Source of the DNA: Saccostrea cucullata
Taxonomy: Eukaryota
Direction of reading: 5' to 3'
DNA length: 64,000 nucleotides
NCBI RefSeq assembly: GCF_032062105.1
Contig: NW_026930741.1
Location: forward strand, 62,001 to 126,000
A program made the position numbers and the translations under genes. The notes beneath the pieces were generated by a model. The model was not told the DNA's origin, searched no databases, and saw nothing but the letters and a program-made list of their open reading frames with translations. Below are positions 25,102-52,582 of the stretch, piece after piece (the stretch's first letter is position 1; the number at the start of each line of letters is the position of its first letter).

Positions 25102-27310
25102 ATGGCGGCCGGTTCGCTTTTACTTTACCTGTGTCTATGGGTGACCGTGGATGTAACAGGGGGCTACTTTTTCGAGCCCGGCTATACACATCACTACACC
25201 TACTCCTCTACCACGGATACTCTGGGGATGCATAATATCACCACTGTCATAAGGGTAAGCTAATGGCCCGGGGGGATTAAATTGATTAAAAAAAGATGAA
25301 CTTCAGAGTTTTTTTTTTTTAAATGCGCATTTATATTGATTTATTTTTTCAATTACACATAAAAACTGTTAAGTGATTTGAAACTTACAAAAAGTGATTT
25401 CCCTCTTTTTTAAAGTTTCAAATTCGAGATGTCAACCATAGTGACAGCCACACCTTGTACGAGCTGAAAGTGGACTCATTCACCCAGCACTCACAACGAG
25501 GCTACTGTAAGAATTCAATTATTTATACTGTTGTCCAGTTTCAAATTATAATGTCTTTTGACTGGCAGGAATTTAGTTTTTGCTGCTTGCCAATTTGAAT
25601 TGAAAGAGATTAGCTTAAAAAGTCTTCAAAAAGCTTATACACGTTAAAAAAACAAGATGTGATTCAATTATGCCTATGAAATAAATTCTTAAAATTTTCC
25701 TAAACAGAATGCCATTAAATGAAAGGTGATTTCTTTTAGATGCGGATAATCCACTGAAATGGAACCTCAGTAGACAGTGAGTTCATTTTAAAAATATATA
25801 CCATGTATGAAATATAAAACATTGGAAGTAGAGAGTGAGTTCTAAATTTTAAAAATATATACTTTAAAAACGGTAATGAAATATAAAAACATTTTGAAAG
25901 ATCATGAAACGTCTTAAGCTTAAGTCAAAATATTCATGTTGAAATTAAGTCAAGTATATAAAAAAATATATATTTTTTTATTTGTGTGCAAAATTAGAAA
26001 TTTGTTCAATAATAAATAAACATTTCAACGATTAAAAAACTTTAAAACCTTTTGACCTTGGAGATTTATGTATTTTAAAAAAAACTTTAACCTAGGTCAT
26101 AACTTTCAAATGATACGGGCTAGGTCTTTTATACTACATGTATATATATGAAATTCCAGTGAAAAGACCTTTATCATTGGACACAGTTTACTAAAAATAC
26201 ATTGACATTTTTATAATTGATTGACCTTCTTATGATCATCAAAAATGTGACCTCCTTTTTAAAAACAAACTTTGACTTTAACTTCTAAACAAGGTGTCAT
26301 GTTTTTGTTTACATAGGTTGAAATATTAATATATCCTTGTTCAAAGCAGATAATTTCAATTGAAGTAAATTCTAATTCAAGAACTTTGATTTTGAACTTC
26401 ATTTTGTTATAGATATGAAATTTTCTACTTTTGTAAACAAAAACTTTAACTTCATTACATTATAATTTTTAAGTTCGTTTATTAATAAACAAATGGTGTT
26501 TAATTTTTTGCTGATCATTAGATGATGCTTTAGTTAGAAATTGTAAATTGGTTTTAAGAATTCAGTTGAAACCGTGTCCATGCCCCTTTAAATGTGTCAG
26601 CGTAGATGTTCTTCTTCATTTGACAGTGAGCTGTTGATCAAACTACCTGTCTAAATCTTCATCAAAGACTCAAATAACTTTTGTAATCAAAAAGATGGTG
26701 TCTTCCTCTCTGTCTGTCTGTTTATCTGTTTGTCCGCAAAAACTTTAACCTTGCCCATATCTTTTGATTTAGTGGAGCTATCACTTTCATATTTCACATG
26801 TGTATTCCTTTTAAAGACCTTTCTATGTGTACTACCAAATTTGACCTTTGGCCTTGATCTTGGAGTTTGAAACAATTTTACTAAAAAATTCCAAAGTTTT
26901 ACTTTCGCCATAACTTTTGAATGGTTATGACTAGGAAATTCATCCTTCAAATATGTATTATTTGTGTCAAGACCTTTCATTGGATACCAACAATTAAGTT
27001 TGACCTTTTAAGCTAGATGACACCGGACTGGTTCATATTTAGTCTGTTTTTTTTTTAAATTAAAAAAAAACTTAAACGTAGGTCATAACTTTCAAATACT
27101 ATACTATACTATATATATGAAATTCCAGTGAAAAGACCTTTCATTTGATACCAAGAACTTTGACCCTTTTACTTTGACCCTGGAGTTTGACCTCCTTTTT
27201 AAAAACAAACTTTGACTTTAACTTCTGAAGGGTTAGGACTCTTATACTTCACATATTTAATCCTTGTGACAAGACCTTTCATTGGATGTAAAGAACTTTG
27301 ACCCTTTGAT

Positions 27311-27348
<38 letters not shown>

Positions 27349-30300
27349 ACCATAATTTTTGAACCTCCTTTTTCATACATGTAACAAACTTTGACTTTCT
27401 TTAAAATCCTTTGAAGGGTTTGATCTACCTTTAAACAAACTCCAACATATAACTTTTGAAAAGATGCTTGTGACTTATATTTCGATTGAATTTGGATGTA
27501 AAGAACTTTGCGTACCACCAAATCTGATTTGCATTTGAGAAAGTTTAACTTTGCTATGTTACCATACGGGGTATCAGTGTTTCACAAACTCATCTTTTTT
27601 TGTAGTTTTCTGTTTAAGCTAGATGACACCGGACTGGTTCATATTTAGTCTGTTTTTTTTTTTTTAAATTTATGTAATTCTTATGACAAGGGGAGAGAAA
27701 TCCAATCATCTCTGTGTGTGTGCGTGTGTGTGTGTGTCTGTGGGTGAGTGAGTTAGTACTGTGCGCACTGGTAGTAACTTTTTTAAAAATCGGAATCGAT
27801 GTCGAATGCTGTTTTGATTTATATATCCTTTTGGAGGGGAGGTTTCGATTTGATGTGCCCTTGTACAGTTGGGTTGAGCTGAGAAAGTGCGTGGTTAATA
27901 TTTGGACTGATTTGACTGTTTTCTGTTTGATTAGATAGGACAGGACTAATTCATTTTTAGTCTGACTTTTATATTTTGTTTGCGCTTCGGGAGACAAGAC
28001 TTGTTCAAATTCCGTCTAATTTTAGAGTATTTTGTTTGGACTGTGGGACACAGGAGAAATAGGAATATGCCTTGTCTCCTTCATCTTAAACAGAAAAAAC
28101 TATAAAAATCAGACCAAGATGAAACAGTCCCGCTTCCCCTAGTCAGTTTCCGATTGAGATAGACAGGACAGGGCTGTTTCAAATATCTTATTGGTAGTTT
28201 CCTGTTTGAGCCGGGGTGTGGTAAGTTCGAAATTGGTTCATTTTAACTCCGATTATTACAGTTTCCTGTTTGAGCTGGGGGAGACGGGAGTGGTTCATTT
28301 TGTGCATTACCATCCAGAGGATAAAGAGGAGGTCGTCACTGTGAAGAAGGCAATTGTCGGTACAATGTCAGCCCATTTCAAGGTAAGGGATTGGTCGGTA
28401 CAATATCATCTCACTTCAAGGTAGAGGATTGGTCGGTATGATGTCAGCTCACTTTCAGGTAAGGGATTGGTCGGTACAATGCAGCTCACTTCAAGATAAG
28501 AGATTAGTCAGTATATAGAGTCAGCTCCAAGTATGGGATTGGTCGATACAATGTCAGCTCACTTCCAGGTAAGGGATTGGTCTGTACAATGTCAGCTCAC
28601 TTCCAGGTGAGGGTTTGGTCGGTACAATATTAGCTCACTTTCAGGTAAGGGATTGGTCAGTACAATGTCAGCTCACTTCAAGATAAGAGATTAGTCAATA
28701 CAGAGTCAGCTCCAATTAAGGGATTGGTCGGTACATTGTCAGCTCACTTCCAGATAGGGGATTGGTCGGTACAATGTCAGCTCACTTCAAGGTAAGGGAT
28801 TGGTCGGTACAATATCAGCTCACTTCCAGTTATAAGGGATTAGTCGGTACAATGTCAGATAACTTTCAAGTAAGGGATTGGTCTGTACAATGTCAGCTCA
28901 TCTCCAGGTAAAGGATTGATCGGGACAATGGCAGTTAGCTTTGTGAACTTAATTCCATGTAAAATTGTGTTCGTACTTTATCAGGCCAATTAAGGTAAAT
29001 GATTGATCTATACTTTGTCCTTCAACCTCTAAAATATCATTCAGTATTTTATCAGCTCTATTCCTGATCAATTCATTTAAAAATTTCAAATTTCAAATTT
29101 CCTTTCTTTTGCATCGTAAGGTATCAGAAAAAGATCGATGGACATACACTTCAAACGAAATAGATCACGGAGGTACATATTTCATCTTTTCAGATTTCGT
29201 ATTCTAAATGATTAAAATAAGTTTCAAGTTATTTCTCAATTTATGCATGCTTGTAAAATATTTCATGTAAATACCGGTAAAATATTTCAGGACATCTGTT
29301 ACATACTTACGAGGGGCAGAAGACGTCTGAAGGTCACATGTTATCCAGATACCACTATAGCGATGACAATGTCATTCGTACACACAAAAAGGTCAGGTGG
29401 AAAAACACACAGTACACGGCTTTCGGCGATACGTTTCTCTGAAATACTGAAGCATATTTAAGTGATTTTATTCTGTAATTTTTCTTTTGTCATAAACAAT
29501 GCATTATTTGATATTTTTTGGTTATTTGTGTGATTATCTAGGTCCTGCATTACAACAATAACGGCATGATACACAGAATCCATCTGGTGGACAACATAAC
29601 AACATACGACACAAAAGATTCTAGATTCCAGTAAAGTGTCTCTCTTTCCTTTTGTCTTTTCTCTCTCTCCTCTCTCTCAATTTTTACGCTACTTCTTCGA
29701 AATGATTGTATGGGCAACTACTGGAAGTATAATATACCATAGCAAAGTATAGGGAAAGGGAGTAATTTATGGGAGTAAGAGGTACAAAAGGTAGAAATAA
29801 CGAACGGTGATCGATCTCAAAATAACTATAAACAATACAAATATGTGAAAAGAACATGAACAAGAAGTCAGGAGCCCAGTAGTGTCATAAAAGCAATAAT
29901 TTGTAGTCGATATTATTATTTAGAAGAAATAATACAAATTAAAATGGTAAACTGATATAGTATGTCACCTTTGTTGAAGGGCTAACTATAAGATGTCTTT
30001 GAAATATTTTTCAGTAATGGGTTGCATGACAATGGAGCTATAAAGATCTACTCATCAGGAGGTTTGTATAATAACAATTCTACACGTACTTATAGGTACA
30101 CCTCGTTAACTAAAAATAAGGTTCTGATATTTAATTAAAAGTATTGATTAGTTTATTTACAATGACCAACCAACAATTGTTTTCCAGAATTTCCTACCAT
30201 CCAAACAATAGGAGAGACGCATGTCACATTTCAGGAGAAAAAGTAAATTAAAAACAGTGGTCTTACCACTTATTAAGAAAGAAAAATAACTATGATATAA

Positions 30301-33300
30301 ACAAAAATCAATTTTATAATTTTCATTTCGTATACAAATAAACAAAAATCTTCAAGTGACTTTATTTTGTTATGTAGGAAATATAAAGAAGACGGGGTAC
30401 AAGGTGTGATAGCAGCCTTAGTGAAGGACATCTTAACAGTTATAAAGGTCAGCTATCAAATTGAATTTATCCACTCAAAACATACAGGAGTGTTGGGTCA
30501 ACTTGTATCATTTTCATAAATATTTTATTTTTAGAGACCAGAAAAACCTCTAGAGTTGAAGACGATAGAAAAGAACATAGATGCTATGATAGAATGCATA
30601 CATAGATACGACGACAAAAGTAAGTAAATCTTTACATCTTCGATGATGTATCTCCCCGACTTTCCGTGTACGCATTGCAGTAGTGTTTTTGCCTTATATC
30701 GAAGTCTAAGAATTTTTTTTGTTCTTTCTATGGACAAGTTTTACGCTTTAAAAATTGTTGTATCAGGGAACCTGGTTTTGTCCATTGTGATTGAAATTTG
30801 AACTTGAAAAGGTTTTTTAAAATGGCTTAAAGGATAATCAAACCATCTGTTAACATTGCTTACTTTATGATGTTTCACCACAAATGTTTACAAATTGAAA
30901 ACATAATGTGAAACCCTTTGTATTCTGTTCTTTCAGCTGCCGTGGGAAGAACTGAATGTGTCAAGCAGCTTCAGGAGAATGTTACCCGTCTGATTGACTC
31001 AGACTTGATAGCTTTAGCTGAAAAATTCCTCCTTAAAAATGAGTGTGATAGAAATTATACAAGATGCACTGACGAGCGCCATCTGATGATAGATGTTATA
31101 GCACGTGTCGGAAGTGACGTGGCACAACAGATTGTCATAAGACATGTTCTCAATAACAGCGCTGCTAGTGATGAGGAGATGCGCCATGCTCTCATTCATT
31201 CCATAAGTTTTCAAAATCCAGTTTATGTAGGTTTCCTATATAAGGCATCCGATTTCTTTTTACAAAACTAGCAGATTATTCATTATCTAACGTATTCATA
31301 GTGATAAAAAAGATAAATGTGTTTGCTGTGTTTCTTATTTTTTCGATCACATTTTGTCCGCCGTCCGTCCGTCTATTCACAATAGTATACAAAGCATCCT
31401 TGGGTAAAGGGGAATTTAAATTGTTTCAAGTCCCCTCACGATAATCAAGAAAAGACAAAAATAGGGTGGGGTCATTAAAAAATCTTTTTCAAGAACCACT
31501 GGGCCAGAAAAGCTGAAACTTATGTGGAAGCATCCTGGGGTAGTGTATCCAAAATACAAAAAAGTTGATTTAAATGCGTCAATAATAGCAGAGTGCATTC
31601 TAATATATTTCAGGAACTCATCACTGCAGTAAATGCATTATGCTTTTCAAGGAATTTAAAGCTAGGTAACTTGAAGTCTGACATTGTTTTATTTTAAAAA
31701 GTTAAGTTCATTTATAAATTTTATTCTAATGTAAATCATTGTTTTTAATATTAATATTCTATTGTAAAATCATTGTTTTAACATATATTCAGAGCCTAGT
31801 TTTGTCAGTGACACACAAAGGCGTGCATGCCTTACTCTTGGTGCCATTGTGAAAAACCTTCGTCAGAATGGAAACGCTTCGTTGGCTTTACAGCTTGTAC
31901 ATAAGTTGGAGGAAGCTTTAGGGCATCATAATGAAAGTAATATTAAAAAAAAGTGTGATTTAATAATATTCATTCTCCAAATTAAGTAAACTTGTCTTCA
32001 ATAATTCATGTTGTAAAATACAGTTTCAGGCCTAATCGATTCTTGTCTAATAGAAATTATTTTAAAATAACACAGCTGAATTTCAAGACCTGTACAAGCC
32101 CAGGAACCGCCGATCTGCAGAGGAACCACACACAAAAGAAAACAACCACTTACGAAAGAAGAGAATGCTGGTCCATGCTCTAGGTAATGCAGGTCATCCC
32201 AGTTCTGTCCAGCACATAGTGTCGTACATGGAAGCTAACAAAGCCACACCGTCATTGAGGAGAGCAGCCGCTTATGCCCTCAGACATTTTTCTTGTAATG
32301 AGGTAAACTGTAACTTATTAATAAAGTCAACTGTAAATAAAAAATAAACATTTTAACTTAGTTAATTAGAAACACATCTCTTGTTTTAATTTTTAGAGCG
32401 CCAATGCTTTACTGAAGTCGGCTGTGAACGATCTGGAGAATATAGTGAAACAGGCATCATATGAAGTTTATTCTTCTCACCCTGCCGGAAAATCTTTCAC
32501 TCACGAACAAGAAAATATCATTCTAGCGTAAATGCCCTTTCTGTTATTCGCTTTAAATTTGAAAAAAAAATACACTCTCTGTAAACAATGTAAAAAACAT
32601 CAAATATATATAATGCAGGGCCCGGTACTCCTATCCCGTTGTTACGCGGGTCAGACGAGGAACTTTTGCAGACATCCTGAAAGCTCTGAGCTTTGAACTT
32701 GTCCTTCCAAAGGTCGACTGGAAGAAGATCATCGGAAGCAATAAGATTGGGGCATCGTTTGGAATCTTTATGGAAAACTACATCAAACTTAAATTAGGTT
32801 TCTGAAAATTTGCCTTCGAATTAGCTACATAATGAAATATATGTGTAAAGAATATAATATTGATGTTAATTTGTTTTTTCTTTTTCAGCCCCCTTTAGCG
32901 GTTTATTTGACTTAAAAGTTCACGACGAAGCTTGGGCTACTGCAAATTTGGGATTGATCAATCAATTCATAGACATCTTCAGAGTGAAAGTCTGCTACCA
33001 AATAAACTTTCACTACGACTTAAATATTCTAAAGGTAAAATTTTCATATGTTATTAAAATGCATAATTCATAAATACGTAGAAAATCTTAATTTTAAAAT
33101 AATGCATAACAGGGTGTTTTAGTAAATCATATATAATACTAGATAACAAAAATGGCATATAAAAATGTATTTTTATGAAAGATTATTTTTTTCCAAAAAA
33201 AAAAAATTTTAGGTTTTAGAAAAGATTTTAGAACTATAGAGACCGATCTCATGAATTTTGATCCATAACCAGTACAATAATTTATAGATTTATTTAAATG

Positions 33301-36300
33301 ATAAAAAAAATAATTAGGGAAAAAAAATCAAATATTTTTGGATGAATTATCAATTATTATGGGAAGCGGGCGAAAAACAGCATTCAGCACTTAGCCATAA
33401 CAGGGTGGCCTTTGACAGACTTTATCACAATATTGTGGACCCAATAAAGGAAGCAGTAGATCTAATTAGTGACCTCATTGACATGGGAAGGAATCATGTC
33501 TTAGAAAAGATGATCACAGACCTTGTACAACTTCTGAAGGATTTACCTTCATTGATAAAAGAGATGGCGGAAAACGTATGGAAATCGCTGCAGAAGATAA
33601 ACAATTTTGATGGTAACCCTCTGGCAGACCGAGTCAAAAAGTTAATCAACCGTGTTAAAGTTTTCATCGATGACGTCAAAGGTGACATATTAGGATTCTA
33701 TCACGTGAGTTTTCGTTCATTATAATCATTTTACTTTTATCAGGAATCATGTAGACGAAGAGCTGTTTAGTAATAATAAAATAAAAAACCTTAATTCCTG
33801 TTTTAAGCTATTGGAAGGAATTTAAGAAAATTATAAGTAGATTTTAGCTCATTGTAATGGATTATATTTTGATATTCTGAAGTAGCTTTACATGTATATG
33901 CCCTATTCTAATGAATCTATTTATAAATATGAGCTTCTTCAATTTTCTATCCTATTTAATCTTTATAAATTGACATTTAATAACTTTCCTGACAGAGTGT
34001 GGCAGATGCCATCACTGTGTCCTTACCTTTTGTCGGCAAAGAAATAAAGGAAGGGTTTGAACTCATCGGAGATTCCTGGAAATTCTGGGAAAACCCCATA
34101 GCGTCATTTCATGGCATGGAGAACGCACTTCTGAAGTAAGATATATATTTATTATTCGTTTATAAAAACTTTGTGACTGATCATCACTGAGGAATGCTTA
34201 GATTTTAATTATGGTTTATGATAATGTGTTGTGAGTTTTTTTTCAAAAATATGACATTATTAACACTGTTGATATTTTCCCTCTGATTTCCTTAGGTTTA
34301 AACTAGCTGTTATAACTTTCGTAGAAGCAAAAGAGAGAGTAATGGATTCCTTAAACATTTTTAAAGGTAATGATTTTGTTAGTTAAATGTATCAACAGAT
34401 AGTTCTTGAGCCCCGAAATGTACCAGTTGCTGTAACTCATTTTGCAATATTTCAGGTACACGTTAAGATAAAGCAATGAAATATGCGGAGATAACGAACA
34501 GTATTCGAGTTCAAAAGTCCATTAAACATAACAAAATAGGAACAGAGCAAACACGGACCTCCAAAACATCAGAAGTGGGATCAAATGCTATGGAGGAGGG
34601 AGAGCGATAAAATCAAATCAGGAAAAATCATTATCATTTACTCCTCATGTCTAACTTAAGTAAGCTGAATTTTATATGTTACAAATAAAGGGGGACTTCC
34701 ATACTGGTTTCACCCCATTGAAGAAGTTAAAGGCATGATGAACGACGTTATGGACATTATGGGTCTGATCAATGACGAAGTATTCCACTACAAAACAGAT
34801 CCAGCCTCAAATTTTTCCGTGGCCGACATCACGGACGGACTTATGATGTGTGTAAGTACAAACGTTACAAAAGATTCAAATACGGGAACACTTTGATTAG
34901 ATAATGTTCAAAGTAAATTTAAAATTAATTTCCTCAGGAAAACAAAAGGATCATCCATGATCTGGTAAAGGATGCCGTTATGCCTGTTTTAAATCAAACA
35001 CTGGATAGAGTTAAAGAGATTGCCAAACCTTTCTGGGACAAAGTTACAGAAGTAATTGACCTCTTCAAGAGAATCAAGAGTTCTTATGACTTCGTAAGAG
35101 AGGCGTAAGTTTTAGTATTTATAATGTACCTTTCATTAACATAAACTCACTGTCTTCCAACAAAGAAGTTAAGAATAACGAGTGAAATATTTATGGAAAC
35201 AATTATGAATATTACCTTATTACAGCATTAACAAAGGAAAATTCTTTATCCAAAAAATCTTCGGAGCCAAATTTCACAGAAAGTTTCCAAAAACTCCCGG
35301 CCCTTGTGATGTACCTTCATGTGCCTGTGGTGAATACAGGAAGATAAGTAACGGAATGATGGGGATAGATCTGATGATAGACTCCAAGAGTAAAATGGTA
35401 TGTTTATATTGTATTGGTTTTCATATAGATATGTATTAACGCATTAAGTCCGTGCATGGTATATAATTTCGACCGTATCTTATCATTATTCTTCCTCTCG
35501 ACTTATATTTCCTTGTTGCTTTTCAAAATTAAAAATTTAATGCACTATCTGTCATCTTTCAGGACGTACTTAATCCTATGACTGGTCTAGTCTCCTGGTA
35601 CAGCGATACTGAGGTTCTTATCATTCCTCACAGAGTAGACGTCAGCATGTATGAAATTATTGTGTCAAACCTTAAACAAGTAAGCCCAAAAATTCCTAGA
35701 AACAGGAAGAAAAAGTTCTTCCTTGGCGGTCATAAAATTGGCAGGGTTGTTGATAATCTTGAAAATTGCGATTTTAACTTTATCACTGTGTCCATGAGAA
35801 AGAGAGTAGAGAATTCAACAGGTTTGGCAGAGGAAAATTATGAATACATCGATCCTTCTAAATACATAAAGAAGAAAAAACCAAAATCGTTTTGGAAACC
35901 AGTGTGCAAAGAGGCATTTTATCATTACATTGGACAAGTGGCAGACGACCTTGACATGGGAGATGAACCCGAGGAAGACGAAACCGAGACAACAAGAGAA
36001 GTAGACAGCAAGAAAATCAAAGGACCAAAGTTCTTGCATCGACATCATGTGGGAAAGCGGTCCTTAGAAATCAAATATAAGGGGATACGTGATAAAAGAG
36101 CTGTAGAATGCAACGACGAAAACGATAAATCCTTCAAATGCAAACTTAAGAGGTTCGGTACAAAAGTTGGAGAAATGAGAGAATCACTTATACTGAAGAC
36201 GTATGTAATTTATTTTGAATTCAAACAATAGAATGATAATACCTGTAATTGTAAGTATATTAAAAGAAAAAAATTGATATTAAAAAAAAAAAGTAAAGCA

Positions 36301-42300: not shown

Positions 42301-45300
42301 AAAAGTAAAGCTTTTTTAAAATGATATGTAAATTTTATTTTTCAGGTCCACGTTGGTTTAATAAACGTGCCAGAAGATACCTTTGATAATGGCACGGTCA
42401 TGCATGCGGATGAAAAGCGAATTACTCTCAGTTTTCGAGCACTAGATGCTGAAAGTGGTGTTTCCAAGATTTTTGTTGCAATTCTTTCAGAAGGAAGACA
42501 AGCGAGTCCCAATGATTATCGTTCCTATGCATTCTCCCACACAATAGATATTGAAAAGTAAATCATTTAAATCTTGAGTTTCACAAAAGTTTAGGTTAAA
42601 TATTATGCATAAAAATGAGTAAATCAAAAATGTTGTTAGTACTTTATATACATTTTGACAACACGTTTGAGAGGTTTATTTCTTTGTAAAATTTATTATA
42701 TATAGTAAACGAAAAAAGAATAGGATAAAAAGTAAAACTATATTTTCTTCAATTATTTGTTATTTGTTTGACATTAATGTTACTTTAACTAATTTTTTGT
42801 TCTTATTTTCCTAGTTTAAAATTAATACCCTCCAACGTGTACCGAATTTTTGTTATTGTTGAGAATGGCGCTGGCATAAATTCGACAATAAATAAAGAGA
42901 AAACAATCTACATCATGAAGAAGAATATTCCCGGAACAGTTTTTGATGGAAGACAACTTTTAGTGGATGAGGACTTCACGGAAGACAGGACATCTTTAGC
43001 GATGTCTTTTGTCGGTTTTAAAAGCGAAAGTTGTAACATTGTGAAGTATGAGTGGGCTATAGGTTATCAACCTTTTGTATACGATGTTCTACCGTTCACT
43101 GATTACGGTATTGTCATGCATAATGAAAGTTTTGGTCAAGGCCAAATGCACCTTCGTTTATACGAAGATTCTACATATTATATTACCGTTCGGGCTAGAA
43201 CAGGTTATAATTGCAAAGTTGGACAATATATCGTTTCAACTTCTGACGGAATAAAATTGGACACAATACCTCCAGAAATAAAGATAATCGAGTTTGGAGA
43301 AAAAATCATTGATTCCGATCTGAAAGGAGAAACTCTTTATCTAGATCGAACTGATGCAGCGTCAGTCCGTTGGAATTCTTCAGACTCCTCGGGTATAGCA
43401 GAAACATGGTGGTCTATCGGAACGCTGCCTGGAAAAGATGATCTTCACCAAAGAACTTTCACAAGAATAAATTTCATTCCGGCTGGAGCAGCATCTTTCA
43501 CAAACGGTCAAACTTTCTATCTTAACATTGGCGCTACAGACAATGCCAGGAACAAAAAAATTGTTACTTCACCAGCTATCACTATTGACATTACGGCTCC
43601 AGTCATCACGGATTACCATTGCACCCCGTTTATATCAGATAGAAGATCTCTAGTGGAATGCCAATGGGGAATGGTACAAGATCAAGAAAGTATGATCACA
43701 AAAGTATTTGTTGGTGTAGGAACGAATGAAACGGTCCCTGATATTTCTGAATTTCATGAAATTCCAATGCTGAAGAGAAACTGGATTCGAGATATGCACA
43801 CCAAACTTAAAAACAATTTAGTTTCTAAAATTTATATAATTATAAAGGTAATCAATGGGGTTGGTTTAATTTCTGTTAAACCTTATGAAATAAGTGTAGA
43901 CAGAACACCACCCGAGAAAGGCCGAGTTGAAATTATCACTTCACTTGACCTGGACCAGCCGCCAAACAGACAGTTATGCCAGATCCCTCAAACATTTATC
44001 GAAGTAAGGACTTTTGGTTGGATTGATAAGGAATCGGAACTACTGAGGTATCGTATTTTACAATAAATTGATAAATGTTTTTATGACACCATGTCTTTCT
44101 ATAATTCTACCGTGATTAAAAAGATAAATAGCACAAAATTGATTTCATTATTTCTTACGTTAAATCGATTCTGAAAGACCTCTTCAAAGGAAAACAATCT
44201 TAATAGTTCATTTTATTTTCAAGGTATGAGGTTGCCGTTGGAACGAATGGCAAAACGACAAACATAAAAGATTTTATAACCCTTGAAAATCCAGAGAAAT
44301 TTTTGATCAACGGTATTTTTATGCCTGAAGGAAGTAAAGTCTACGCCACCGTTCGAACCTTCAACAAAGCTGGATTATATGGTCAAATGAGATCAGATCC
44401 AGTTGTGATAAGTTCACAGCCTTCTCTAATGGTTATCGATGGGCCTTCAGATGAAGATATTGATTTCCAGTCATCGTTGGGTATTCTTCAAGGACGATGG
44501 ATATATTCTGATCCATGTAATATCATCAGTGCTGAATGGTCAGTAGAAATGTTAGATGGTTCAATTTTTAAATCGCCATCTTTAATCCCAAAAGGTTTGA
44601 CTCATTTCTATTCTGATTTAGTGACTCTTCAGAATGGAATAACATATATTAACGTCATCAAAACAACTGATGCTTTAAATAGAACGAGAATCAGTAGATC
44701 GAATGGGGTGGCGGTTAAAATACAGCCACCTATTCCTGGCGATGTTCGTGATGGTATTCAGGAGGATCTAAACTACCAAGAGTCAGTAACATCTTTAAGT
44801 GCTAACTGGGATGCATTTGGCAAAAGTTTGAACTCCAGAGACCCGACCCAGCAAATTGTATATTACGAAGTGGCCATTGGAAACGACAGGCGTTTTCCAA
44901 ATACGAGAACGAACGTTCATTATTTTGAAAACGTAGGCCTTAACACTACATATACATTTACTGGGCTAAACCTTACCGCCAAAATTGTCAAATACTATAT
45001 CACTGTACGAGCAATGAGTCGTGCTGGGAGTACACAGGAAAGTTATTCTAATGGAATCCGTGTAGGGTATAGAAACGAAATAATTCCTGGGGAAATCGAG
45101 TCTTCAAATATACAGTCCTCTACTTCCGATCTTGCTGTTTCTTGGACTGGATTCCAGGCTGACATGGGTATAGACTATTTCCGCATTGGATTAAGTTCAT
45201 TTTCCCCCAGTCTACCTAACGGAACTCTAAATTGTGTAGAATTTAATAGCATTTTACCAGAACTTGATCAAGTACCAGTTTTTAAGGTCGAGAGAGATAC

Positions 45301-48300
45301 TTTTTTCCAATTTAAGAATCTGCATTTAAAACATAATCACAACTATTTTGTTACTGTTGTGGCAACGGATGTTACTGGGCGTTGCATCGGCGTGCATGGT
45401 GATCCTATTCTTATAGACACCACTCCTCCAAAGCCGGGAGGTATTTTTGTTGAAGGTAGCGAGGGTGATAATGTTCTTTACTCAACAGAACCTGATCACT
45501 TTTTACTTGAATGGGATCCTTTCCAAGATAAGGAAAGCAAAGTTAAATTATACGAAATATCAATCTTCAGCACAATGGCTTGCTCTGATAAAGATGCAAA
45601 AAATGCGGAAACATCTGATTTTTATACTCTTGTGAAAGAGGATCGCGTTGAAAATGATAATAAAATTGTTTTCTATGACTTAAAACTTGAACCAGGAGTT
45701 TCCTACATTGGACGAGTAAAAGCTTGGAATGAAGCAGGCTTGGAAGCAAACATTGTTTCAAAACATATTCGATTTGATTTCTCATCTCCTATGCCAGGAG
45801 CAGTGAAAAGAGGAAATAGTTGGTTCAAAGAACTTTCATTCCAACCATTCACTAGTCACGTGGACGGACTGTTTGGTATATCAAATCCTTCAAACAATGC
45901 TCCCTTTAGATGTGAATCTCAGGAAGTTTTGGTTCCTTTTGCAGATAAAAAGAAATCATATTCTATTTTAGATGATCAATTTTCTCCCAAGTGTATTGAA
46001 ACAGATGGAAACAAAATAAGTTTGTTAATTCGTCACGATGATAATTTGAGAAGCGTTATCAAGGGAGGAATTTTAGTGGAAAATAAAGATTTACGAAATG
46101 GCAATTACACTGTTAACATTAAATCTGTGTTGGGCCTTAATATGGTCTCTACAATATTCTTTGGATCGGACAAAGATTCAGTTGTATCCAACTTTGAATA
46201 TACACCAGAAAAGAGAGTTAACTCATCTTTTAAAGAATGGAATGATAAATCTGATTACCGGAGTAAAAATATAACGAATTCTGTTGATAACGAAAACCTA
46301 ACCATGACAACAGAAAGTACCCACATTAGCAAGTCATGGACAACACAAGACTCTCTCAAACAAGAGGACCCTGAAAATAATGAAAATGCGATGAACAAGT
46401 CTAAAAGAAATTCCATGAGTATTGGAAAGGAAGGAGAATACAGCTTCGGCGTCCACCTTCCTGGTTATCAGTTTGATGATAACTGGGTCGCTTTCTTTTG
46501 GATAAAGGACAAATATAGATCTGAGGTAAAGCAAGTTGTTCTCGAATATAACCCTACTTCATCAGGGACAGAATTTTCTTTCAGCACAGCAAAAAATGAA
46601 CTGGCTACACACACAACATGGGGATTGCGATTTTTCATTAATGGTGTATTGAAGGGGGAATACAGTGGTTTGAGACTTTCAAGTGAAGGGATAATGGGCA
46701 TTTACAATTGGAATAAGGATAACTACTTTCCACCAATTTCAGACCCCGACTTTCCTGTTGCCTACAAATCAGTTGCTGTTATTTCTGACCTTAAAATACC
46801 TTTACCAATGGAAAAACCGTGTATGCACGGCTTACCCTTTTCAGACACCGAGAGTGGAATAAAAGAGATTTTTGTTGGTCTGTCGGATACCAAGAGCACC
46901 AATAACACTGCATCAATTTCTCCGTTCACCAGATTTAAAACTTTTTGTAAACCCTGTAAATCCGATTGTAACATTGATTGTGATTCTTTATGTAAAACTC
47001 ATCAAGCAGATTTTAATATTTTGCCTTTTACCATAAATAATGTAAATCTGCAATATGCAACAATCGATAAAACAGATATCAAAGCCAATGGATCCAGCTT
47101 CCATGCTCCGACCTATTACATTAATGTGAAAGCGATTAATTATGCAGGACTGGAAACCGTTGTTTCTTCCGATGCTGTTATGGTGGACATTTCTCCACCT
47201 GTTCTTGATTTTGTTCGTTGCCTTGATCCTTCAGACTCCATGGACGCTCCTTCACTTTTCCAGGGGACAAATAAAAGTATCGCTGCGTACTGGGATGGCT
47301 CTGAAGACGTTGGGGATATCGTAGCGTATAATATTTCCATCGGAACAACTCCAGGTAAATCTAAAAAAAAACATTGATATCAATAATACTTTTAAATGAA
47401 AGGTAACAAGGTAAAATAAAATGTTATTTTTTGAAGGTGGAGAAGACATATACAATAAAACAGGAGTTGGTTTGGCTACGAAGATAAAAATTGATGACCT
47501 AGATGGTAAACTTCTTCACGATCATACTTACTTCATCACAATAACAGCGATTAACTCTGCCGATTTAACGGCAACGAAAACGTGTAACATCACGGTAGAA
47601 ACCAAAGCCCCTGATATCAGTGGCCTGAAGGTTAAACTTCTGTTTGGTAAATCAAGAAGTCAAGGTCGCTTCACAACTGAAAATAGTAGAGAACTTGGAA
47701 TAACATGGACAGGTGGAAAGGCTGATGTGGAATTTTATGGTAGGATATGGTTTCTAAATTTGAAGAATCGTTTAACAATTATCTTGAAATTCATTATTTG
47801 ACTTTTTTTTAAAATTTAAATTGAATTTTGTTAAAGAGTGGCAAGTTGGATCTGTGCCAAGGGGAGATGACATATTTCCACGGGTGAAGATAGGATTAAA
47901 AAATTCCAAGAAAGCTGCTATTGAGAACGGGGAGCTGCGAATTGATGACAAATCATTAAATGCAACTGTTGGCGAATACGCAAAACGGAATTGGACAGAA
48001 GAAACACTTAAAGAAGCCAAAGCAAACACTTTCTTCAATATGGAGCCAGGGCTTTGTCTCTATATTACGTTGTTTGCTGTAGGGAGGTCTCACTTATCAA
48101 GTTCCAGACAAATTGAGCCATTCTGTATAAAACGTATGTTAACCAAAATTCTTTTTTTTGGGGGTGAATTTTCGTGAGGATGAATGATAATGAATTCTGA
48201 TTAATATTCAAATGTACATAAAAAGCTTTTATGCTTTTATTATCTTTCATCAGGCAACGAAGACAAAGAATTTACAGTACATAAAAGACGCAGAACTTCG

Positions 48301-50628
48301 AATCAAATTCATGTTGGAAGAAATCTTGAAATCAACCCAAATGGTATAACGCAATTTGAAATCATTTAAATTTTGAAATTTAAACATATTATATAAATAA
48401 TTGATAAATAAAAAAAAATTAAGGAGGAGCTTATTTCTAAAGTAATCTTTTCTCTCTTTTTTAGCTATATTTTCGGTTTTTATTTAATAGTAAACTTATC
48501 ACGTTATATTGTCAATTATAATTTGTGCATTGATTAATCAATGAGACTGATAATAGGCGGTGTTCTGAGTGGGATTCTAACAGAGAAGGACTACACAGAG
48601 GAGTACGGGTCTGCTGCCTCCGGAAGTTACATAAGATACATTGTGAACCCAACAGAAAGATTTTCTGATACCTCTCGATTTCTGAGGAACAGGTTAACTT
48701 TGAAAACTAATATAAATGAACTATTTAAGCACTTTAAGATATCTCAAATCAAGTTTAAGTTTCAAGATAGTACTCAGTACACGAAATATATGACGTCCGA
48801 AAATAATTCTTGTCACATGCAAATTATCTAACAATTTATTGAGAAAAATCTAGTCTAAGAAAGTTTGTAAATCAAGATCACGTAAAAAAGAAAATGACTC
48901 CTAGTCCCTTTTTTAGAATCCTTTCGAACACAGGACCTTCTTTTTATATCACACCCACAGAGGAATTGGTGGATGTCATCACAAAAATTGCCGTAAACTC
49001 CTCCGATTTTGATATAAATATGAACATTCCAGCTCTTGTGTATTGGGATAGAGGTGAGTTATCCAATCTTTCCTGGCTTTGTGTTTATCTGATAGATGGA
49101 ATGTTATTTCAAGCAACTCTATCCTTGTATACCTGGATAGAGATAGATTGCTCAAATTTAAAACAGTACAGTTATCACTTGTGTTGATATAAATATCAAT
49201 TGTTCAATGCACGGCTTACTCTGTTCCTTAGAAATACAGAAATGGGTCTCCGTTGAGGAAATGTGCAAGGGTTCAAACATCCCTACAAATATTCTTGATA
49301 CATTGGTATGTTCAAAAACTATTTTATTTCACTTATCGTTTTTAATGTAATAAGACACATTTTGTACATTGAGATGATGTAATTATTGAATTATATTTGC
49401 CTCAGGTCTGCTCTAAAGTATTCCAAACAGATCTTAGAAGAAACAAAAGAAGTACAGGCAATAAAACATTGGAAAGCCATCCTCGAATGTTTACAGTAAT
49501 GAAAATCAAAAGAGATGCACAAAATAACAAACCGATCATTACCACAAACGGTCCTCTGCACTACCTGGAAGATAATACAACTACTGCTAAGGTTCTAATA
49601 GAATCCTATGATATTGAGAATGACAGTTTGCATTATTCTATAGAAGAAAACTCTAGAAATGGTCAAGCTAATATATCATTAGACGGTTGGTTTATTTATG
49701 TTCCAAACGAGGATTTCAGTGGAAATGACTCTGTAAAGATATGCGTAACCGAAGTAAATGTATCGTCACCGTTTGTAGCAACAAAATCCTGCAAGGTCTT
49801 TGACATTGAAATCGATCCTACAAATGATGATCCCACAATAGAATTCCATCCTCATTTTCCACTAAATTCTAGTGGAGATACGCATACAATTGTTTTTGAG
49901 GGAAATATCACAAGAGATAATATATATGGAATTATCTCGGCCGATGACGTTGATAAAAACAATAATTTAACAATCAGGCTGATAAACGATTCCGCAAGCC
50001 AACTTTCTTCATTCAAGCTGACAAAATCTGGGACTAACCGCATTCAAAGTTCTCACTCAAGTTCTCATGTTGAAATGTATCTAAGTCACCATCTGAGTAA
50101 AGAATTTAGTGGCCTCAGTGAAGTTGGAATCAGAGCCCATGACGACCAGCTTGACTCTCGAAATCTGTATGGCTACAGTAAAGAGATAACTATCCAAGTT
50201 TTTGTTTTGAAAAATCCTTGTGTTCACGGTAAATGCATAAACTTAACAGAAACGTCTTGCACTGATTCATCACGTGCATATAGTTTCCATAATTTTGCCT
50301 GCGATTGTAGCCTTGGTTACGATGGACAATGGTGTGAAACTGACATTAATGAATGTCACCCAAACCCCTGTTCGGTCTTTTACGACTGTGAAAACTTAAT
50401 TGGTCGGTATGAATGTGTCTTGAATGGTCCTAAAACCTTTGGACTAGCGATAGGATTCCTCTTCATCATTGGTTTCCCCGTCCTGTTATTCTGGAGACAT
50501 GTGAAAAAGCGTCGACCCAGTAGCAAAGTCTCTGACAGTATGTTTCTCCCACCATCAAATAGAAGGTAATCTATCACATCCACAGTATTACATGTACATG
50601 AAGAAATTAAATGCAATTTCTAAATACA

Positions 50629-50674
<46 letters not shown>

Positions 50675-52582
50675 CTCGTTGTTCAAACGAAGGGCCACGC
50701 CCTCTTCCAAGGGGACATTATTATAAATTAGTGAAAAATTAAGGGCATTTTCATCTTCCTCTCAAGAACCACTGGGCCAGGAAAAACCAAACTTGCTATT
50801 AAGTATTCATGGGTAAAGGGAATTCAAATTTGTTCAAATGAAGGGCCACGCCCTCTTCCAAGGGGACATTATTATGAATTAGTGAAAAATTAAGGGCATT
50901 TTTAAAAAATCTTCTTCTTAAGAAACACTGGGCCAGGAAAAATGAAACTCATGTGAAATCATCCTCAGCTAGTGTAGATTTAAATTTGTTCAAATCATGA
51001 CCCTGGGGGCAAGGGTTGGGGCAAAATGGCCGATCAAATTTTTATATAGGAATATATTGGGAAAATCTTTAAAAATCTTCTTCTCAAGAACCATTGGGAC
51101 AGGAAAAATGAAACTCATGTTGAATCATCCTCAGATAGTGTATATTCTAGTTTGTTCAAATCATGGCCCCCGGGGATAGAGTACGTTGGCCCACAATGGC
51201 CGATCAAAGTTTTACATAGGAATATAAAAGAAAAATCTTTAAAAATCTTCTTTCAAGATCCATTGGGACGGGAAAGATGAAACTCATGTTGAGTCATCGT
51301 CAGGTAGTGTAGATTTAAGTGTGTTCAAATCATGACCCCTGGGGCAAGGGATGGGGAAAAATGGCCGATCAAAGTTTTACATCGGAATATAAAGGAAAAA
51401 CCTTTAAAAACATTCTTCTCAAGAACCATTGGGACAGGAAAGATGAAACTCATGTTGAATCCTCCTCAGCTAATGTACTATGAATATGTAGGGAAATTTT
51501 TAAAAAATTCTTCTCAAGTACTGCAAAGCCATGATTAGTGATATTTTTATGGAAGCATCCTCGGATACTATAGATTCTAGTTTGTTCAAATCATAACCCC
51601 CAGGGAAAGGGTGGGGCAACAATGGGGGATTCAAGTTTTACATTAAAATATATTTTAAAAATCCTTTTTTTAGAATAGCAAATTATGATTAGTGATATTT
51701 ATATGGAAGCATCCTTATGAAGTGTAGAATTAAATTTATACAAATCATAACATCGAAGAGTTGGGAAGGGTACCAATGGTAGATCAAAGTTTTACAAAGG
51801 ACAATAAAGGGAAAAATCTCAGTAACAGAGAAGCTATGTTAAGTCATATTAACATGTTAATCCTCATGTATTGAAGATTTAATTTATTTTAAAATCATGA
51901 GTACCCTTTAGGATAGGGAGGGAAATGATGGGGAGTCAAATTCAAATTATTACAAAGTAATATACAAACAAAAGGTTTAAAAAATCTATAAAAATCTTTT
52001 TCTTAAAAACTTTCTTTAGAAGTTATATGCAGAATTGATATGGAGGCACTCTCAAGTAGTATTAGAATTCAACCCCCCCCCCTCTTTAGTAAACATTTCA
52101 ATTCCGATCTGATTGTGCGTTTTCCTAGCCGATGTGCTCAGGTTAGCGATGTGGCCCCTGGGCCTCTTGTAAAATGCTTTTTCTTTCAATGTGCAGACAT
52201 TATTACATCTTTTTCATTTATCTCTTTTGTAAGACTTGCACGAAGAGGCAGATACAATCCAAAGCTTTTAGCTCCTAAAAGCGATATACCAACAACGTCA
52301 AGTGATGAAACCTGGAGGAAATCCTTCCCCTTTGAGAGCGAAGAACAGAGGATGTCAGCCATGAATTCTTTAGCAGAACACAATGCCAATATAAGAAAGA
52401 ACGACACAACATCGATGTCTGAAACTGCATTCAAAAAGTGGGCAATGCCTCGGAAAAAGATATTTACTGGCAGACAACTTATTAAACGTGATGGAATTTC
52501 TTCGACCGAATCTGGAATTCCCGAGCCACCACAAAGAGTTGCAACTCCGAGCGGCATTACTGGGATGTTTTCAGTCGAATAA
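25102..52582 (+). CDS. Giant type I membrane protein with N-terminal vitellogenin/LLT domain, LECT2/M23-like domain, PAN, FN3-like repeats, cadherin-like repeats, EGFs and TM helix (~50 exons, roughly 5,000 aa)
   Basis: Exon 1 25102-25254 (MAAGSLLLYLCLWVTVDVTGGYFFEPGYTHHYTYSSTT...), missed by the ORF track. It is followed by phase-compatible exons 25416-25506, 25740-25776, 28262-28382, 29121-29172, 29291-29391, 29542-29630 ... 35226-35397, 35563-~36200 ... 38813-~40008, 42815-~44047, ~44224-47354, 49406-50564, 52234-52582. Splicing across 33034-33400 is uncertain. Confidence 0.88.
26030..27600. mobile_element. Degenerate Helentron-like elements of a second family (tgacctt/aaaactttaacct repeats)
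   Basis: Repeated tgaccttggagtttgacc, aagacctttcatt and aactttaaccttg motifs, a (TGTC)n-like stretch near 26710, and the end gggtatcagtgtttcacaaactcatctt. Confidence 0.6.
28356..28935 (+). repeat. 38-bp minisatellite (~15 units) spanning the exon 4 donor site
   Basis: Unit GTCGGTACAATGTCAGCTCACTTCAAG|GTAAGGGATTG; the first unit is the true exon end at 28382. Confidence 0.92.
35300..35868 (+). other. LECT2 / peptidase M23-like domain, predicted inactive
   Basis: CDVPSCACGEYRKISNGMMGIDLMIDSKSKM|DVLNPMTGLV...YEIIVSNLK...GHKIGRV...NFITVSMR...IDPSKYI resembles LECT2 CD..GCGQY..R..HQGVDILC...VYAPFTG...KGEKLG...SHVHIE..DPTAYL. The His residues of HxxxD and HxH are missing. Confidence 0.6.
39050..48130 (+). 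other. Array of FN3-like Ig-fold repeats
   Basis: Recurrent motif (I/V)DxTPPxxGxVxDG...DxDxQ...AxW..FxDxESGI..YxxxxG...Y...V.A.N.AG, more than 10 copies across the ORFs from 38826 to 48177. Confidence 0.75.
39590..39755 (+). other. PAN/apple domain
   Basis: SADECAENCLNYGDKCISFDFEFHTETCDL...YKNYER (C-x3-C...C-x-SF...C-x-L...Y-ER). Confidence 0.8.
49520..50515 (+). other. Two cadherin-like/bacterial Ig-like repeats, two EGF-like domains and transmembrane helix
   Basis: NNKPII..DIENDSLHYSI..NG...[80 protein letters not shown] followed by the basic stop-transfer RHVKKRR. Confidence 0.85.
50631..52170 (+). mobile_element. Non-autonomous Helentron/HINE-type element with ~166-bp internal satellite, in the last intron of gene 4
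   Basis: Subterminal inverted repeats AGCTCACCTGAGC (50634) and GCTCAGGTTAGC (52136), 3' hairpin GGCCCCTGGGCC, T-rich 5' flank, and internal units (TTCTTCTCAAGAACC...GTTTGTTCAAATCATGACCCC) spaced ~166-169 bp. Confidence 0.85.

What the first reader, a model, noticed from the sequence alone, without database searches (positions are those of the whole stretch)
25102..52582. Membrane-anchored giant member of the large lipid transfer protein superfamily
Seen: the spliced frame appears to run from a signal peptide and Vg/apoB-like LLT module through M23-like, PAN, FN3-like, cadherin-like and EGF domains to a TM helix and ~140-aa tail. One junction (33034-33400) is unresolved. Established: Vg, apoB, apolipophorin and MTP are soluble, and Vg/apolipophorin typically end in a VWD domain. 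Inference: this is a receptor-like LLT protein that may capture lipids, lipid-bearing microbial ligands or lipidated signals at the cell surface. Exons 1-3 are invisible in the ORF track, so annotations may split or truncate the gene.
Basis: partly seen in the sequence, partly recalled or inferred. Interest (0 to 1): 0.8.

Follow-up and report, generated by a model that had tools for sequence, protein, structure and literature searches.

The report
Giant membrane-anchored LLT-domain protein gene
This is one real, expressed gene for a roughly 5,000-residue cell-surface protein. Its outer tip has the lipid-carrier fold of yolk and blood lipoproteins, a fold known so far only from soluble proteins, and the protein belongs to an unstudied family shared by molluscs, acorn worms and amphioxus.

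Summary
From ATG 25102 to TAA 52580-52582 on the + strand, about 45 exons are collinear with full-length RefSeq "uncharacterized proteins" of Mercenaria, Haliotis, Ylistrum, Littorina, Saccoglossus and Branchiostoma. RNA-seq contigs from three studies show GT..AG splices inside the gene.

The N-terminus is a true LLT head:
- Pfam Vitellogenin_N passes its cut-off on one window exon and on two orthologs.
- The ortholog model's only strong fold matches are MTP, lipovitellin, honey-bee Vg and apoB.

M23-like (catalytic histidines lost), PAN, FN3-like, Big_9/cadherin-like and EGF domains, a TM helix and a 139-aa tail are all found.

New here:
- The head looks split. About 840 residues separate barrel, helical domain and first sheet from a long-strand sheet that matches the MTP lipid-binding A-sheet. 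The insert holds amphipathic helices and the M23-like domain.
- The genome has at least four more paralogs.
- The anchor is missing from the Haliotis and Branchiostoma models.
- Junction 33034-33400 narrows to donor 33035 with acceptor 33380 (or 33317).

Lipid or microbe capture remains inference. No paper on such a protein was found. The scan's other notes on this window (s1-711121, s1-711120) overlap it.

The parts
25102..25254 (+). Exon 1: start codon, signal peptide, first strand of the LLT beta-barrel
   Evidence: Hydropathy 2.16. tblastn to P0224 residues 3-48 at 54% identity. Donor AGG|GTAAGC at 25255 and acceptor at 25415.
25416..30621 (+). Small beta-barrel exons of the LLT head. Approximate positions: 25416-25506, 28198-28382, 29121-29172, 29291-29391, 29542-29613, 30187-30242, 30537-30619. 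The chain from 29613 to 30537 is not resolved.
   Evidence: Collinear hits of the A1 profile, tblastn and frame-consistent GT..AG pairs.
30937..32797 (+). Exons of the LLT alpha-helical (HEAT-like) domain and the start of the first sheet. Exon 32066-32344 carries the Vitellogenin_N hit.
   Evidence: Pfam 29.3 bits. A1 profile positions 223-560. Acceptor at 32618 coincides with the loose ends of RNA contigs at 32619. The joint 32795|32887 is seen in 3 runs.
32889..33034 (+). Conserved beta exon directly after the helical domain, in the position of the LLT C-sheet
   Evidence: 47-51% identical to the Mercenaria, Haliotis and amphioxus orthologs. RNA joint. Low-confidence strands 601-665 in the model.
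33381..35104 (+). Amphipathic-helix insert: exons 33381 (or 33318)-33704, 33996-34135, 34296-34361, 34686-34851, 34938-35104
   Evidence: RNA joints 34135|34296, 34361|34686, 34851|34938 and 35104|35226. Helical hydrophobic moment z = 6.1, 4.5, 1.7 and 3.3, against 0.4 and -0.4 in control exons. Long helices 681-959 in the model.
35226..36200 (+). M23/LytM-like domain without the zinc and catalytic histidines (35226 to about 35403 and about 35560 to 36200), plus a charged linker
   Evidence: A2 profile against PDB 5KQB, E 4e-5, and LECT2, E 0.26. Peptidase_M23 below its cut-off in 7 of 19 orthologs. The window reads NGMMGID where M23 has HxxxD. The intron at 36201-36375 is seen in RNA.
36376..37800 (+). 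Helical segment (weak SAP-like hits) and a Cys-rich beta-sandwich, not assigned to a family
   Evidence: A2 profile hits at positions 265-533. Model elements 226-533. SAP in 5 of 19 orthologs.
37824..39000 (+). Long-strand beta-sheet resembling the LLT/MTP lipid-binding A-sheet. Exons 37824-37956, 38249-38328, about 38493-38675, and from about 38799 onward.
   Evidence: Model residues 543-700 against MTP 722-878: Z 10.3, 152 aligned, rmsd 9.1. Foldseek top hit is MTP at 1.4e-6. MTP_lip_bd in 7 of 15 and Vit_open_b-sht in 4 of 15 orthologs, all below cut-off. MTP is the only PDB sequence hit by the A3 profile, at E 0.41. RNA joint 37956|38249.
39520..39770 (+). PAN/apple domain inside the most conserved exon (about 38799-40010)
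   Evidence: PAN_1 23.9 bits on the window exon and in 18 of 19 orthologs. Model against the HGF N domain: Z 12.4, rmsd 2.2, 83 aligned.
40097..48174 (+). About 2,500 aa of FN3/Ig-like beta-sandwich repeats, including the 3,131-nt exon 44224-47354
   Evidence: fn3 26.4 bits. Internal repeats in tblastn. 78 word-search hits and 1,096 library hits. Splice sites of the big exon.
48238..49302 (+). Small exons before the membrane-proximal part (48538-48696, 48912-49055 and others)
   Evidence: tblastx conservation with the related contig L003. tblastn.
49406..50565 (+). Exon with the Big_9/cadherin-like domain (49523-49750), two EGF-like domains (50213-50420), the TM helix (50438-50494) and the basic stop-transfer stretch
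   Evidence: Pfam. Hydropathy 2.38. Coordinates. 67% identity to L003. Donor AAG|GTAATC at 50566.
52234..52582 (+). Last exon: 115 aa of cytoplasmic tail with the conserved KSFPFESE..MSAM..LAEHN motif, and stop TAA
   Evidence: Conserved in L003 directly behind its TM exon: tblastx 75.8 bits, local alignment score 218. Weak match to the Ylistrum tail. Acceptor at 52233.

Best explanation
Shown. Window 25102-52582 (+) is a single, intact, transcribed gene of about 45 exons. It encodes a type I membrane glycoprotein of roughly 5,000 residues, an ortholog or paralog of unnamed RefSeq proteins in molluscs, a hemichordate and amphioxus.

Order of parts:
1. Signal peptide.
2. LLT head: beta-barrel, then a helical domain of about 17 helices, then a short first sheet.
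3. About 300 aa of strongly amphipathic helices.
4. A degenerate M23/LytM domain.
5. Helices and a beta-sandwich.
6. A long-strand sheet like the MTP/Vg lipid-binding A-sheet.
7. FN3-like domain, then PAN.
8. About two dozen FN3/Ig-like domains.
9. Cadherin-like domain and two EGF-like domains.
10. TM helix and a 139-aa tail.

Inferred, about 40-45%. The long beta-sandwich stalk holds the head far above the membrane. There the barrel, the sheets and the amphipathic helices bind an amphipathic ligand such as lipid, lipoprotein, LPS or LTA. The dead M23 domain and the PAN domain add peptidoglycan, peptide or glycan contacts. The conserved tail couples binding to uptake or signalling. On this reading the protein is a surface lipid or microbe capture receptor, in a family expanded in this genome.
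For: One gene:
- Collinear tblastn of P0224 (residues 3-4856) and P0082 (residues 6-4327) on the window.
- 28 collinear profile hits.
- GT..AG joints in RNA contigs of 3 studies.
- A 2,047-nt RNA contig that is spliced at 32619 and carries 1,726 nt further 5', which is the size expected for all upstream coding sequence.
- The same order Vitellogenin, M23, PAN, then fn3 in B. belcheri.

LLT head:
- Pfam Vitellogenin_N at 29.3 bits (window exon), 50.6 bits (Mercenaria) and 31 bits (Haliotis), against a cut-off of 24.
- The A1 profile hits lipovitellin 1LSH at E 6e-4 over positions 21-432.
- In Foldseek the top 11 matches are all LLTPs, from 1.9e-15 down to 4.5e-6 (the full-length LLTP matches at 1e-10 or better), and the next class starts at 1e-4.
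- VIA-align gives Z 16-18 for apoB, lipovitellin, MTP and Vg over model residues 18-598. Generic HEAT proteins reach at most 14, and only on the helical part.

A-sheet-like part.

Amphipathic helices.

Anchor:
- Hydropathy plus a basic stop-transfer stretch.
- TM helices at the same place in Mercenaria, Ylistrum, Littorina and Saccoglossus.
- A conserved tail exon.

Family expansion.
Against: - The fold evidence comes from a Haliotis ortholog with a shallow alignment (14 and 19 rows, mean pLDDT about 62).
- TM-scores are low (0.2-0.26) and rmsd values are high.
- The A-sheet match is moderate (Z 10.3, rmsd 9.1), and every sequence signal for it is below threshold.
- Whether barrel, sheets and helices enclose a cavity was not modelled.
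- No single RNA contig spans the gene, and the laid reads covered only 32600-38599.
- The four Haliotis models and the Branchiostoma models have no TM helix.
- Signal peptide and TM helix rest on hydropathy alone.
- No ligand, tissue or localisation data exist.
Confidence: 0.78

Rival explanations
1. The head is a structural or protein-binding module. The protein would be an adhesion, matrix or glycocalyx component. For example, its barrel could be read by an LDLR-type receptor on another cell. It would have no lipid cargo of its own.
For: - The best VIA match is the apoB barrel as solved bound to the LDLR propeller.
- Most of the mass is FN3, cadherin-like and EGF adhesion-type domains.
- The lipid-binding sheets are only weakly detected and are interrupted.
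Against: The sheet-like segment and its exon are the most conserved part of the protein, at 42-48% identity to distant molluscs. The insert helices are strongly amphipathic. Both features are easier to explain by binding to a lipid surface.
Confidence: 0.3
2. The protein is a precursor. Convertase or sheddase cleavage releases the LLT head, or the whole ectodomain, as a soluble lipoprotein-like particle, as happens with apolipophorin II/I and Vg.
For: - Dibasic sites lie in a low-confidence loop of the helical domain (RNRR and RKKR in exon 32066-32344), and RRNKR lies before the cadherin-like domain.
- The Haliotis and Branchiostoma models have no anchor.
Against: These sites are not conserved in the ortholog consensus. 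The TM helix and the tail motif are conserved across phyla and between close relatives.
Confidence: 0.15
3. Two or more neighbouring genes have been read as one: an LLT gene and a separate FN3/TM gene.
For: One B. belcheri assembly annotates two genes. No RNA contig bridges the whole locus.
Against: - RefSeq models in several species of molluscs, a hemichordate and amphioxus join both parts (Mercenaria, Saccoglossus and Ylistrum carry both a Vitellogenin_N match and a TM helix), and they are collinear with the window.
- RNA joints run through the supposed boundary, from 32795 to 38249.
- No stop codon or start signal lies between the parts.
- The B. belcheri split sits at an RVT_1 insertion.
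Confidence: 0.04
4. The N-terminus is only a generic HEAT/ARM repeat, and the Vitellogenin_N hit is a repeat artefact.
For: The A1 profile hits designed alphaRep proteins best, through the LGNAG repeat. HEAT_2 also scores on the same exon.
Against: LLTP matches start at residue 16-23 and include the beta-barrel that HEAT proteins lack. They reach Z 16-18, against at most 14 for HEAT proteins. The lipovitellin sequence match spans both barrel and helices.
Confidence: 0.03

Closest known systems
Microsomal triglyceride transfer protein large subunit (PDB 6I7S, 8EOJ)
   Same: It is the best Foldseek match of the N-terminal model (1.9e-15), with barrel plus helical domain aligned at Z 16.5. It is also the only solved protein whose lipid-binding A-sheet (residues 722-878) matches the downstream sheet, both by fold and by weak sequence signal.
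   Different: MTP has about 890 aa, is soluble in the ER lumen, is paired with PDI and is compact. The protein here has about 5,000 aa, an insert of about 840 aa inside the module, a long extracellular stalk and a TM anchor.
Vitellogenin / lipovitellin (PDB 1LSH, 9ENR/9ENS)
   Same: The Vitellogenin_N family match is above the cut-off. Collinear fold match over residues 21-556 against 17-553 (Z 17.2, 15% identity). N-terminal signal peptide followed by the F.PG..Y.Y.Y motif.
   Different: No DUF1943, no VWD and no polyserine region. The protein is not secreted as a soluble lipoprotein. The genome has classical LLTP loci elsewhere, which score far higher (up to 113 bits).
Apolipoprotein B / insect apolipophorin II/I
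   Same: Giant size. A beta-alpha-1 type head (Z 17.9-18.2). Amphipathic helices after the head.
   Different: No DUF1081 and no long amphipathic beta belts. The rest of the protein is FN3, PAN, cadherin-like and EGF domains, and it is membrane-anchored.
LECT2 and degenerate LytM/M23 domains (PDB 5KQB, 5B0H)
   Same: M23-type domain at profile level (E 4e-5). Like LECT2 and bacterial LytM factors, it is probably not a peptidase.
   Different: The first-motif histidine is lost as well. In the window the second-motif histidines are also gone. The domain is embedded in a giant protein, and its model is of low confidence.
HEG1-type EGF-TM-tail proteins
   Same: Membrane-proximal EGF domains, a single TM helix and a short conserved tail. 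One amphioxus family member is labelled HEG1 by its source.
   Different: That label rests on the C-terminal end only. HEG1 has no LLT, M23 or PAN domain. The KRIT1-binding tail was not compared.

Membership tests
[quoted passage not shown] | N-terminal beta-barrel (N-sheet) followed by the alpha-helical domain (Pfam Vitellogenin_N / LPD_N) | tested here: met
   Pfam 29.3 bits on window exon 32066-32344 and 50.6 and 31 bits on orthologs, against a cut-off of 24. The ortholog model matches only LLTPs at the top. Window exons are collinear with that profile. The window's own joined protein was not folded.
[quoted passage not shown] | C-sheet and A-sheet that form the lipid cavity (Vit_open_b-sht, DUF1943, MTP_lip_bd) | tested here: inconclusive
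   Short low-confidence strands lie right after the helices. A long-strand sheet about 840 residues later matches MTP 722-878 at Z 10.3. The Pfam hits (best E 0.0026) and the PDB profile hit (E 0.41) point only to MTP and Vg, but all are below threshold. Assembly of a cavity was not modelled.
[quoted passage not shown] | Binds or transfers lipid | not testable with these tools
   There is only indirect support: amphipathic helices with z up to 6.1.
Vitellogenin family | DUF1943 and a C-terminal VWD domain | tested here: not met
   No such hit on any window exon at E <= 0.1, nor on orthologs at E <= 0.05.
ApoB / apolipophorin family | DUF1081 and extended amphipathic beta regions | tested here: not met
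   No DUF1081 hit. The downstream sequence consists of FN3, PAN, cadherin-like and EGF domains.
MTP family | Compact soluble protein of about 900 aa made of the LLT module alone | tested here: not met
   The protein has about 5,000 aa, a TM helix and many added domains.
Peptidase M23 | Zn-binding HxxxD and HxH motifs | tested here: not met
   The family consensus has no histidine in the first motif and keeps one of the two in the second. The window reads NGMMGID and FNFITVSM at these places. The fold match is at profile level only (E 4e-5).
Type I membrane protein | Cleavable signal peptide, one TM helix, and positive residues on the inside | tested here: met
   Hydropathy 2.16 at the N-terminus and 2.38 at 50438-50494, followed by RHVKKRR. 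The same arrangement is seen in 4 orthologs. No dedicated predictor was available.

The most novel reading that the evidence does not exclude
This would be an ancient bilaterian clade of LLT proteins that went unnoticed. No vertebrate or arthropod member appeared among the named hits I looked up. In this clade the lipid-binding module is split by an insert of amphipathic helices and a dead peptidase, and it is displayed on a stalk of about 25 domains anchored in the plasma membrane. Such a protein would be a cell-surface lipid or microbe capture receptor. It is multiplied in this genome in the manner of invertebrate immune receptor families.
Probability: 0.35. Interest if true: 0.8.

Novelty: new variant of a known kind. 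Interest (0 to 1): 0.68.

Why it matters
All described LLT proteins (Vg, apoB, apolipophorins, MTP and their crustacean and insect relatives) are soluble carriers or transfer factors. A 2024 census of mollusc LLTPs lists only Vtg and Apo types (PMC10799875).

A conserved, expressed, membrane-tethered member with an interrupted LLT module would matter in three ways:
- It widens what this fold is used for.
- It gives a candidate link between lipoprotein biology and surface recognition of lipids or microbes in invertebrates.
- It offers a natural experiment on how the LLT cavity tolerates a large insertion.

It also shows that gene models of this family are often split or truncated, so counts of LLTPs in invertebrate genomes are probably too low.

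Tried and rejected
- Word search with the Haliotis head (residues 1-960) found only 5 orthologs and no classical LLTP.
- The A2 profile against PDB gave no LLTP at E <= 1. Only the trimmed A3 profile did, at E 0.41.
- The ESM Atlas feature search of the big exon gave only generic FN3/Ig clusters, all under 0.9.
- Four literature searches found no paper on a membrane-bound LLTP or on this domain set. The starfish paper they turned up concerns ordinary Vtgs.
- A regex count of the repeat motif failed, so the number of FN3-like units is only an estimate from length.
- The look-up of encoding contigs had no record for P0027 or P0003.
- L002 does not reach the 3' end.
- Rfam found nothing at the intronic high-depth spot.
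- The odd TA..GA joint at 36201|36377 is explained by a one-base shift of a canonical GT..AG intron at 36201-36375.
- Left out on purpose: joining the exons into one protein, and any search or fold of that joined model.


Full report
**Setting.** The window is AT-rich (about 35% GC) and holds no N. It comes from a 1.17-Gb invertebrate assembly, and its nearest named protein relatives are bivalves and gastropods. Every search used single stop-free stretches by reference. Full-length database orthologs stood in for the spliced product in the alignments and folds.

**Is it one gene?** The 1,056-aa stretch 44207-47374 has 78 word-search hits and 1,096 library hits. Among them are long RefSeq "uncharacterized proteins":
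- Haliotis asinina, H. rubra and H. cracherodii (5,123-5,135 aa)
- Mercenaria (5,008 aa)
- Littorina (5,287 aa)
- Ylistrum (4,640 aa)
- Argopecten
- Saccoglossus (4,932 aa)
- Branchiostoma (5,244-5,363 aa)

Mercenaria residues 3-4856 map in order to window 25120-50515, and Haliotis residues 6-4327 to 25123-48696. Profiles built from the orthologs' first 960 residues (A1) and next 1,050 residues (A2) give 28 collinear exon hits from 28260 to 40010. In a B. belcheri assembly, the gene just upstream of the FN3 gene carries Vitellogenin, M23 and PAN matches. So the same order holds there, although that annotation cuts the gene at a reverse-transcriptase insertion.

**RNA.** Twenty runs hold part of the big exon, and four of them are recorded RNA-seq. 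I laid contigs of four runs from three studies on 32600-38599. They show these joints:
- 32795|32887, in three runs
- 34135|34296
- 34361|34686
- 34851|34938
- 35104|35226
- 37956|38249
- 36201|36377, which a one-base shift turns into the canonical intron 36201-36375

One 2,047-nt contig ends at 33030. It is spliced at 32619, exactly the acceptor that my frame analysis predicts. It carries 1,726 nt further 5', which fits the roughly 577 codons that the orthologs place upstream. That last step is inference.

**Ends.** ATG 25102 opens MAAGSLLLYLCLWVTVDVTGG, followed by YFFEPGYTHHYTYSS. This aligns with the Mercenaria, Haliotis and amphioxus N-termini. The TM exon ends at donor AAG|GTAATC at 50566. 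Its in-frame TAA is part of that donor, and the same arrangement is seen in the related contig L003. The tail exon from about 52234 to TAA 52580-52582 is conserved in L003, where it lies about 110 nt behind the TM exon. Both share the motif KSFPFESE..MSAM..LAEHN.

**Junction 33034-33400.** There is one good donor, AAG|GTAAAA at 33035, and two in-frame acceptors. Acceptor 33380 leaves 10 codons before the conserved block, against 13 in the orthologs. Acceptor 33317 leaves 31. I prefer 33380. Neither choice breaks the frame.

**The LLT head.** Exon 32066-32344 passes Pfam Vitellogenin_N (29.3 bits against 24). The Mercenaria and Haliotis orthologs score 50.6 and 31 bits over profile positions 292-531. 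The A1 profile hits lipovitellin 1LSH at E 6e-4 across barrel and helices. It also hits HEAT-type alphaRep designs through the LGNAG repeat.

The AlphaFold model of Haliotis residues 1-960 has mean pLDDT 61.7, with about 70-85 over residues 20-590. It shows, in order:
- a beta-barrel with its central helix (residues 26-247)
- a domain of about 17 helices (276-591)
- short low-confidence strands (601-665)
- long helices (681-959)

Foldseek ranks MTP, lipovitellin, honey-bee Vg and apoB in places 1-11, at 1.9e-15 to 4.5e-6. The next class starts at 1e-4. VIA-align gives Z 18.2-14.1 for these LLTPs, aligned from residues 16-23 up to 556-598. HEAT and ARM proteins reach at most 14, and only on the helical part.

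**A split module.** The N-terminal alignments stop before the LLT sheets. The model of Haliotis residues 960-2010 (pLDDT 61.5) contains a sheet of 14-24-residue strands at model residues 541-697. The evidence that this is an LLT sheet is as follows:
- Its best Foldseek match is again MTP (1.4e-6), with lipovitellin at 3.2e-4.
- VIA aligns model residues 543-700 to MTP 722-878, the lipid-binding A-sheet (Z 10.3, 152 residues, rmsd 9.1).
- Pfam MTP_lip_bd matches 7 of 15 orthologs and Vit_open_b-sht matches 4 of 15 at this spot, all below cut-off (best E 0.0026).
- A 201-column profile of this segment hits only MTP in the whole PDB, at E 0.41.

Each signal is weak, but all point to the same place. 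I put about 75% on this being the LLT A-sheet. It lies about 840 residues after the first sheet, and in the window it maps to about 37824-39000. Whether the parts close a cavity was not modelled.

**The insert and the rest.** The exons from 33381 to 35104 encode helices with high hydrophobic moments (z = 6.1, 4.5, 1.7 and 3.3). An LLT helical exon and an FN3 exon, used as controls, give 0.4 and -0.4.

The M23-like domain is real at profile level (5KQB, E 4e-5; LECT2, E 0.26) but lacks the zinc and catalytic histidines. This agrees with the scan's note s1-711121.

PAN is solid. After it come about 2,500 aa of FN3/Ig-like repeats, a Big_9/cadherin-like domain, two EGF-like domains, and the TM helix [19 protein letters not shown] followed by RHVKKRR. 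No VWD, DUF1943 or DUF1081 was found.

**Family.** TM helices sit at the same place in Mercenaria, Ylistrum, Littorina and Saccoglossus. The four Haliotis models and the Branchiostoma models have none. The Branchiostoma models end in a lectin-like sequence. The anchor is therefore old, being present in both protostomes and deuterostomes, but it has been lost or mis-annotated in some lineages.

This genome holds at least four further copies of the conserved PAN exon (44-53% identity) and a dozen or more loci with head-like exons. In two cases these are paired on the same strand of one contig. Classical LLTP loci lie elsewhere in the genome and score much higher on Vitellogenin_N.

**Function.** What is shown is a surface-anchored giant protein with an LLT head at its far end. 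The rest is inferred from what LLT modules, amphipathic helices, dead LytM domains and PAN domains do elsewhere. On that basis the head would capture lipids, lipoproteins or lipid-bearing microbial molecules, and the conserved tail would link this to uptake or signalling. I give this about 40-45%. A non-lipid adhesion or ligand role gets about 30%, and a shed precursor about 15%.

**Novelty.** Database entries exist, but all are unnamed. Four literature searches and a recent mollusc LLTP census (PMC10799875) show no description of such a protein. I rate it a new variant of a known kind.

Noticed in passing
window 14265-14704 versus 24701-25133: The promoter/5' region and the first ~32 nt of coding sequence of this gene are duplicated about 10 kb upstream at 87.6% identity. 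This matches the scan's note s1-711120. Whether the copy serves as an alternative first exon was not tested.
   Followed up: partly
window 34475-34586 (intron between exons 34296-34361 and 34686-34851): A piece of about 40-110 nt has very high word depth (1,200-2,800) in all four runs, and many short contigs run on into unrelated sequence there. It is probably a dispersed repeat. Rfam gives no hit.
   Followed up: partly
window 50600-51600 (last intron): Several open stretches encode the same repeat-like peptide (FSRTTGPGK..KL...). This repeat fills the 1.67-kb last intron, which is only about 110 nt long in the related contig L003.
   Followed up: no
G000 contigs C20375 (750-762 kb +; 876-938 kb -), C14548 (149-178 kb +), C3661, C10092, C14078, C12379 and others: Paralogs of this gene. 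There are at least four more copies of the PAN exon and a dozen or more loci with LLT-head exons. This is a multigene family in this genome.
   Followed up: partly
proteins P0159, P0119, P0116, P0098 (ENA, 4,031-6,087 aa): These are very long relatives called as single uninterrupted ORFs on contigs of 17-275 kb, with no name or taxon. They share the head-proximal and sheet regions at 21-25% identity. Their origin is unknown.
   Followed up: no
orthologs, model residues 261-276 of P0082:960-2010; UniProt C3ZSG1: Five of 19 orthologs give weak SAP-domain hits (best E 2e-4) in the helical segment after the M23-like domain. One amphioxus fragment is named 'SAP domain-containing protein'. This is odd for an extracellular protein.
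   Followed up: no
window 32066-32344 and 49373-49520: Dibasic convertase-like sites: RNRR and RKKR in a disordered loop of the helical domain, and RRNKR before the cadherin-like domain. They are not conserved in the ortholog consensus.
   Followed up: no
G000 contigs C9372, C9462, C20107, C20942: Classical Vitellogenin_N loci, scoring up to 113 bits. Two of them lie head to head on C9372.
   Followed up: no
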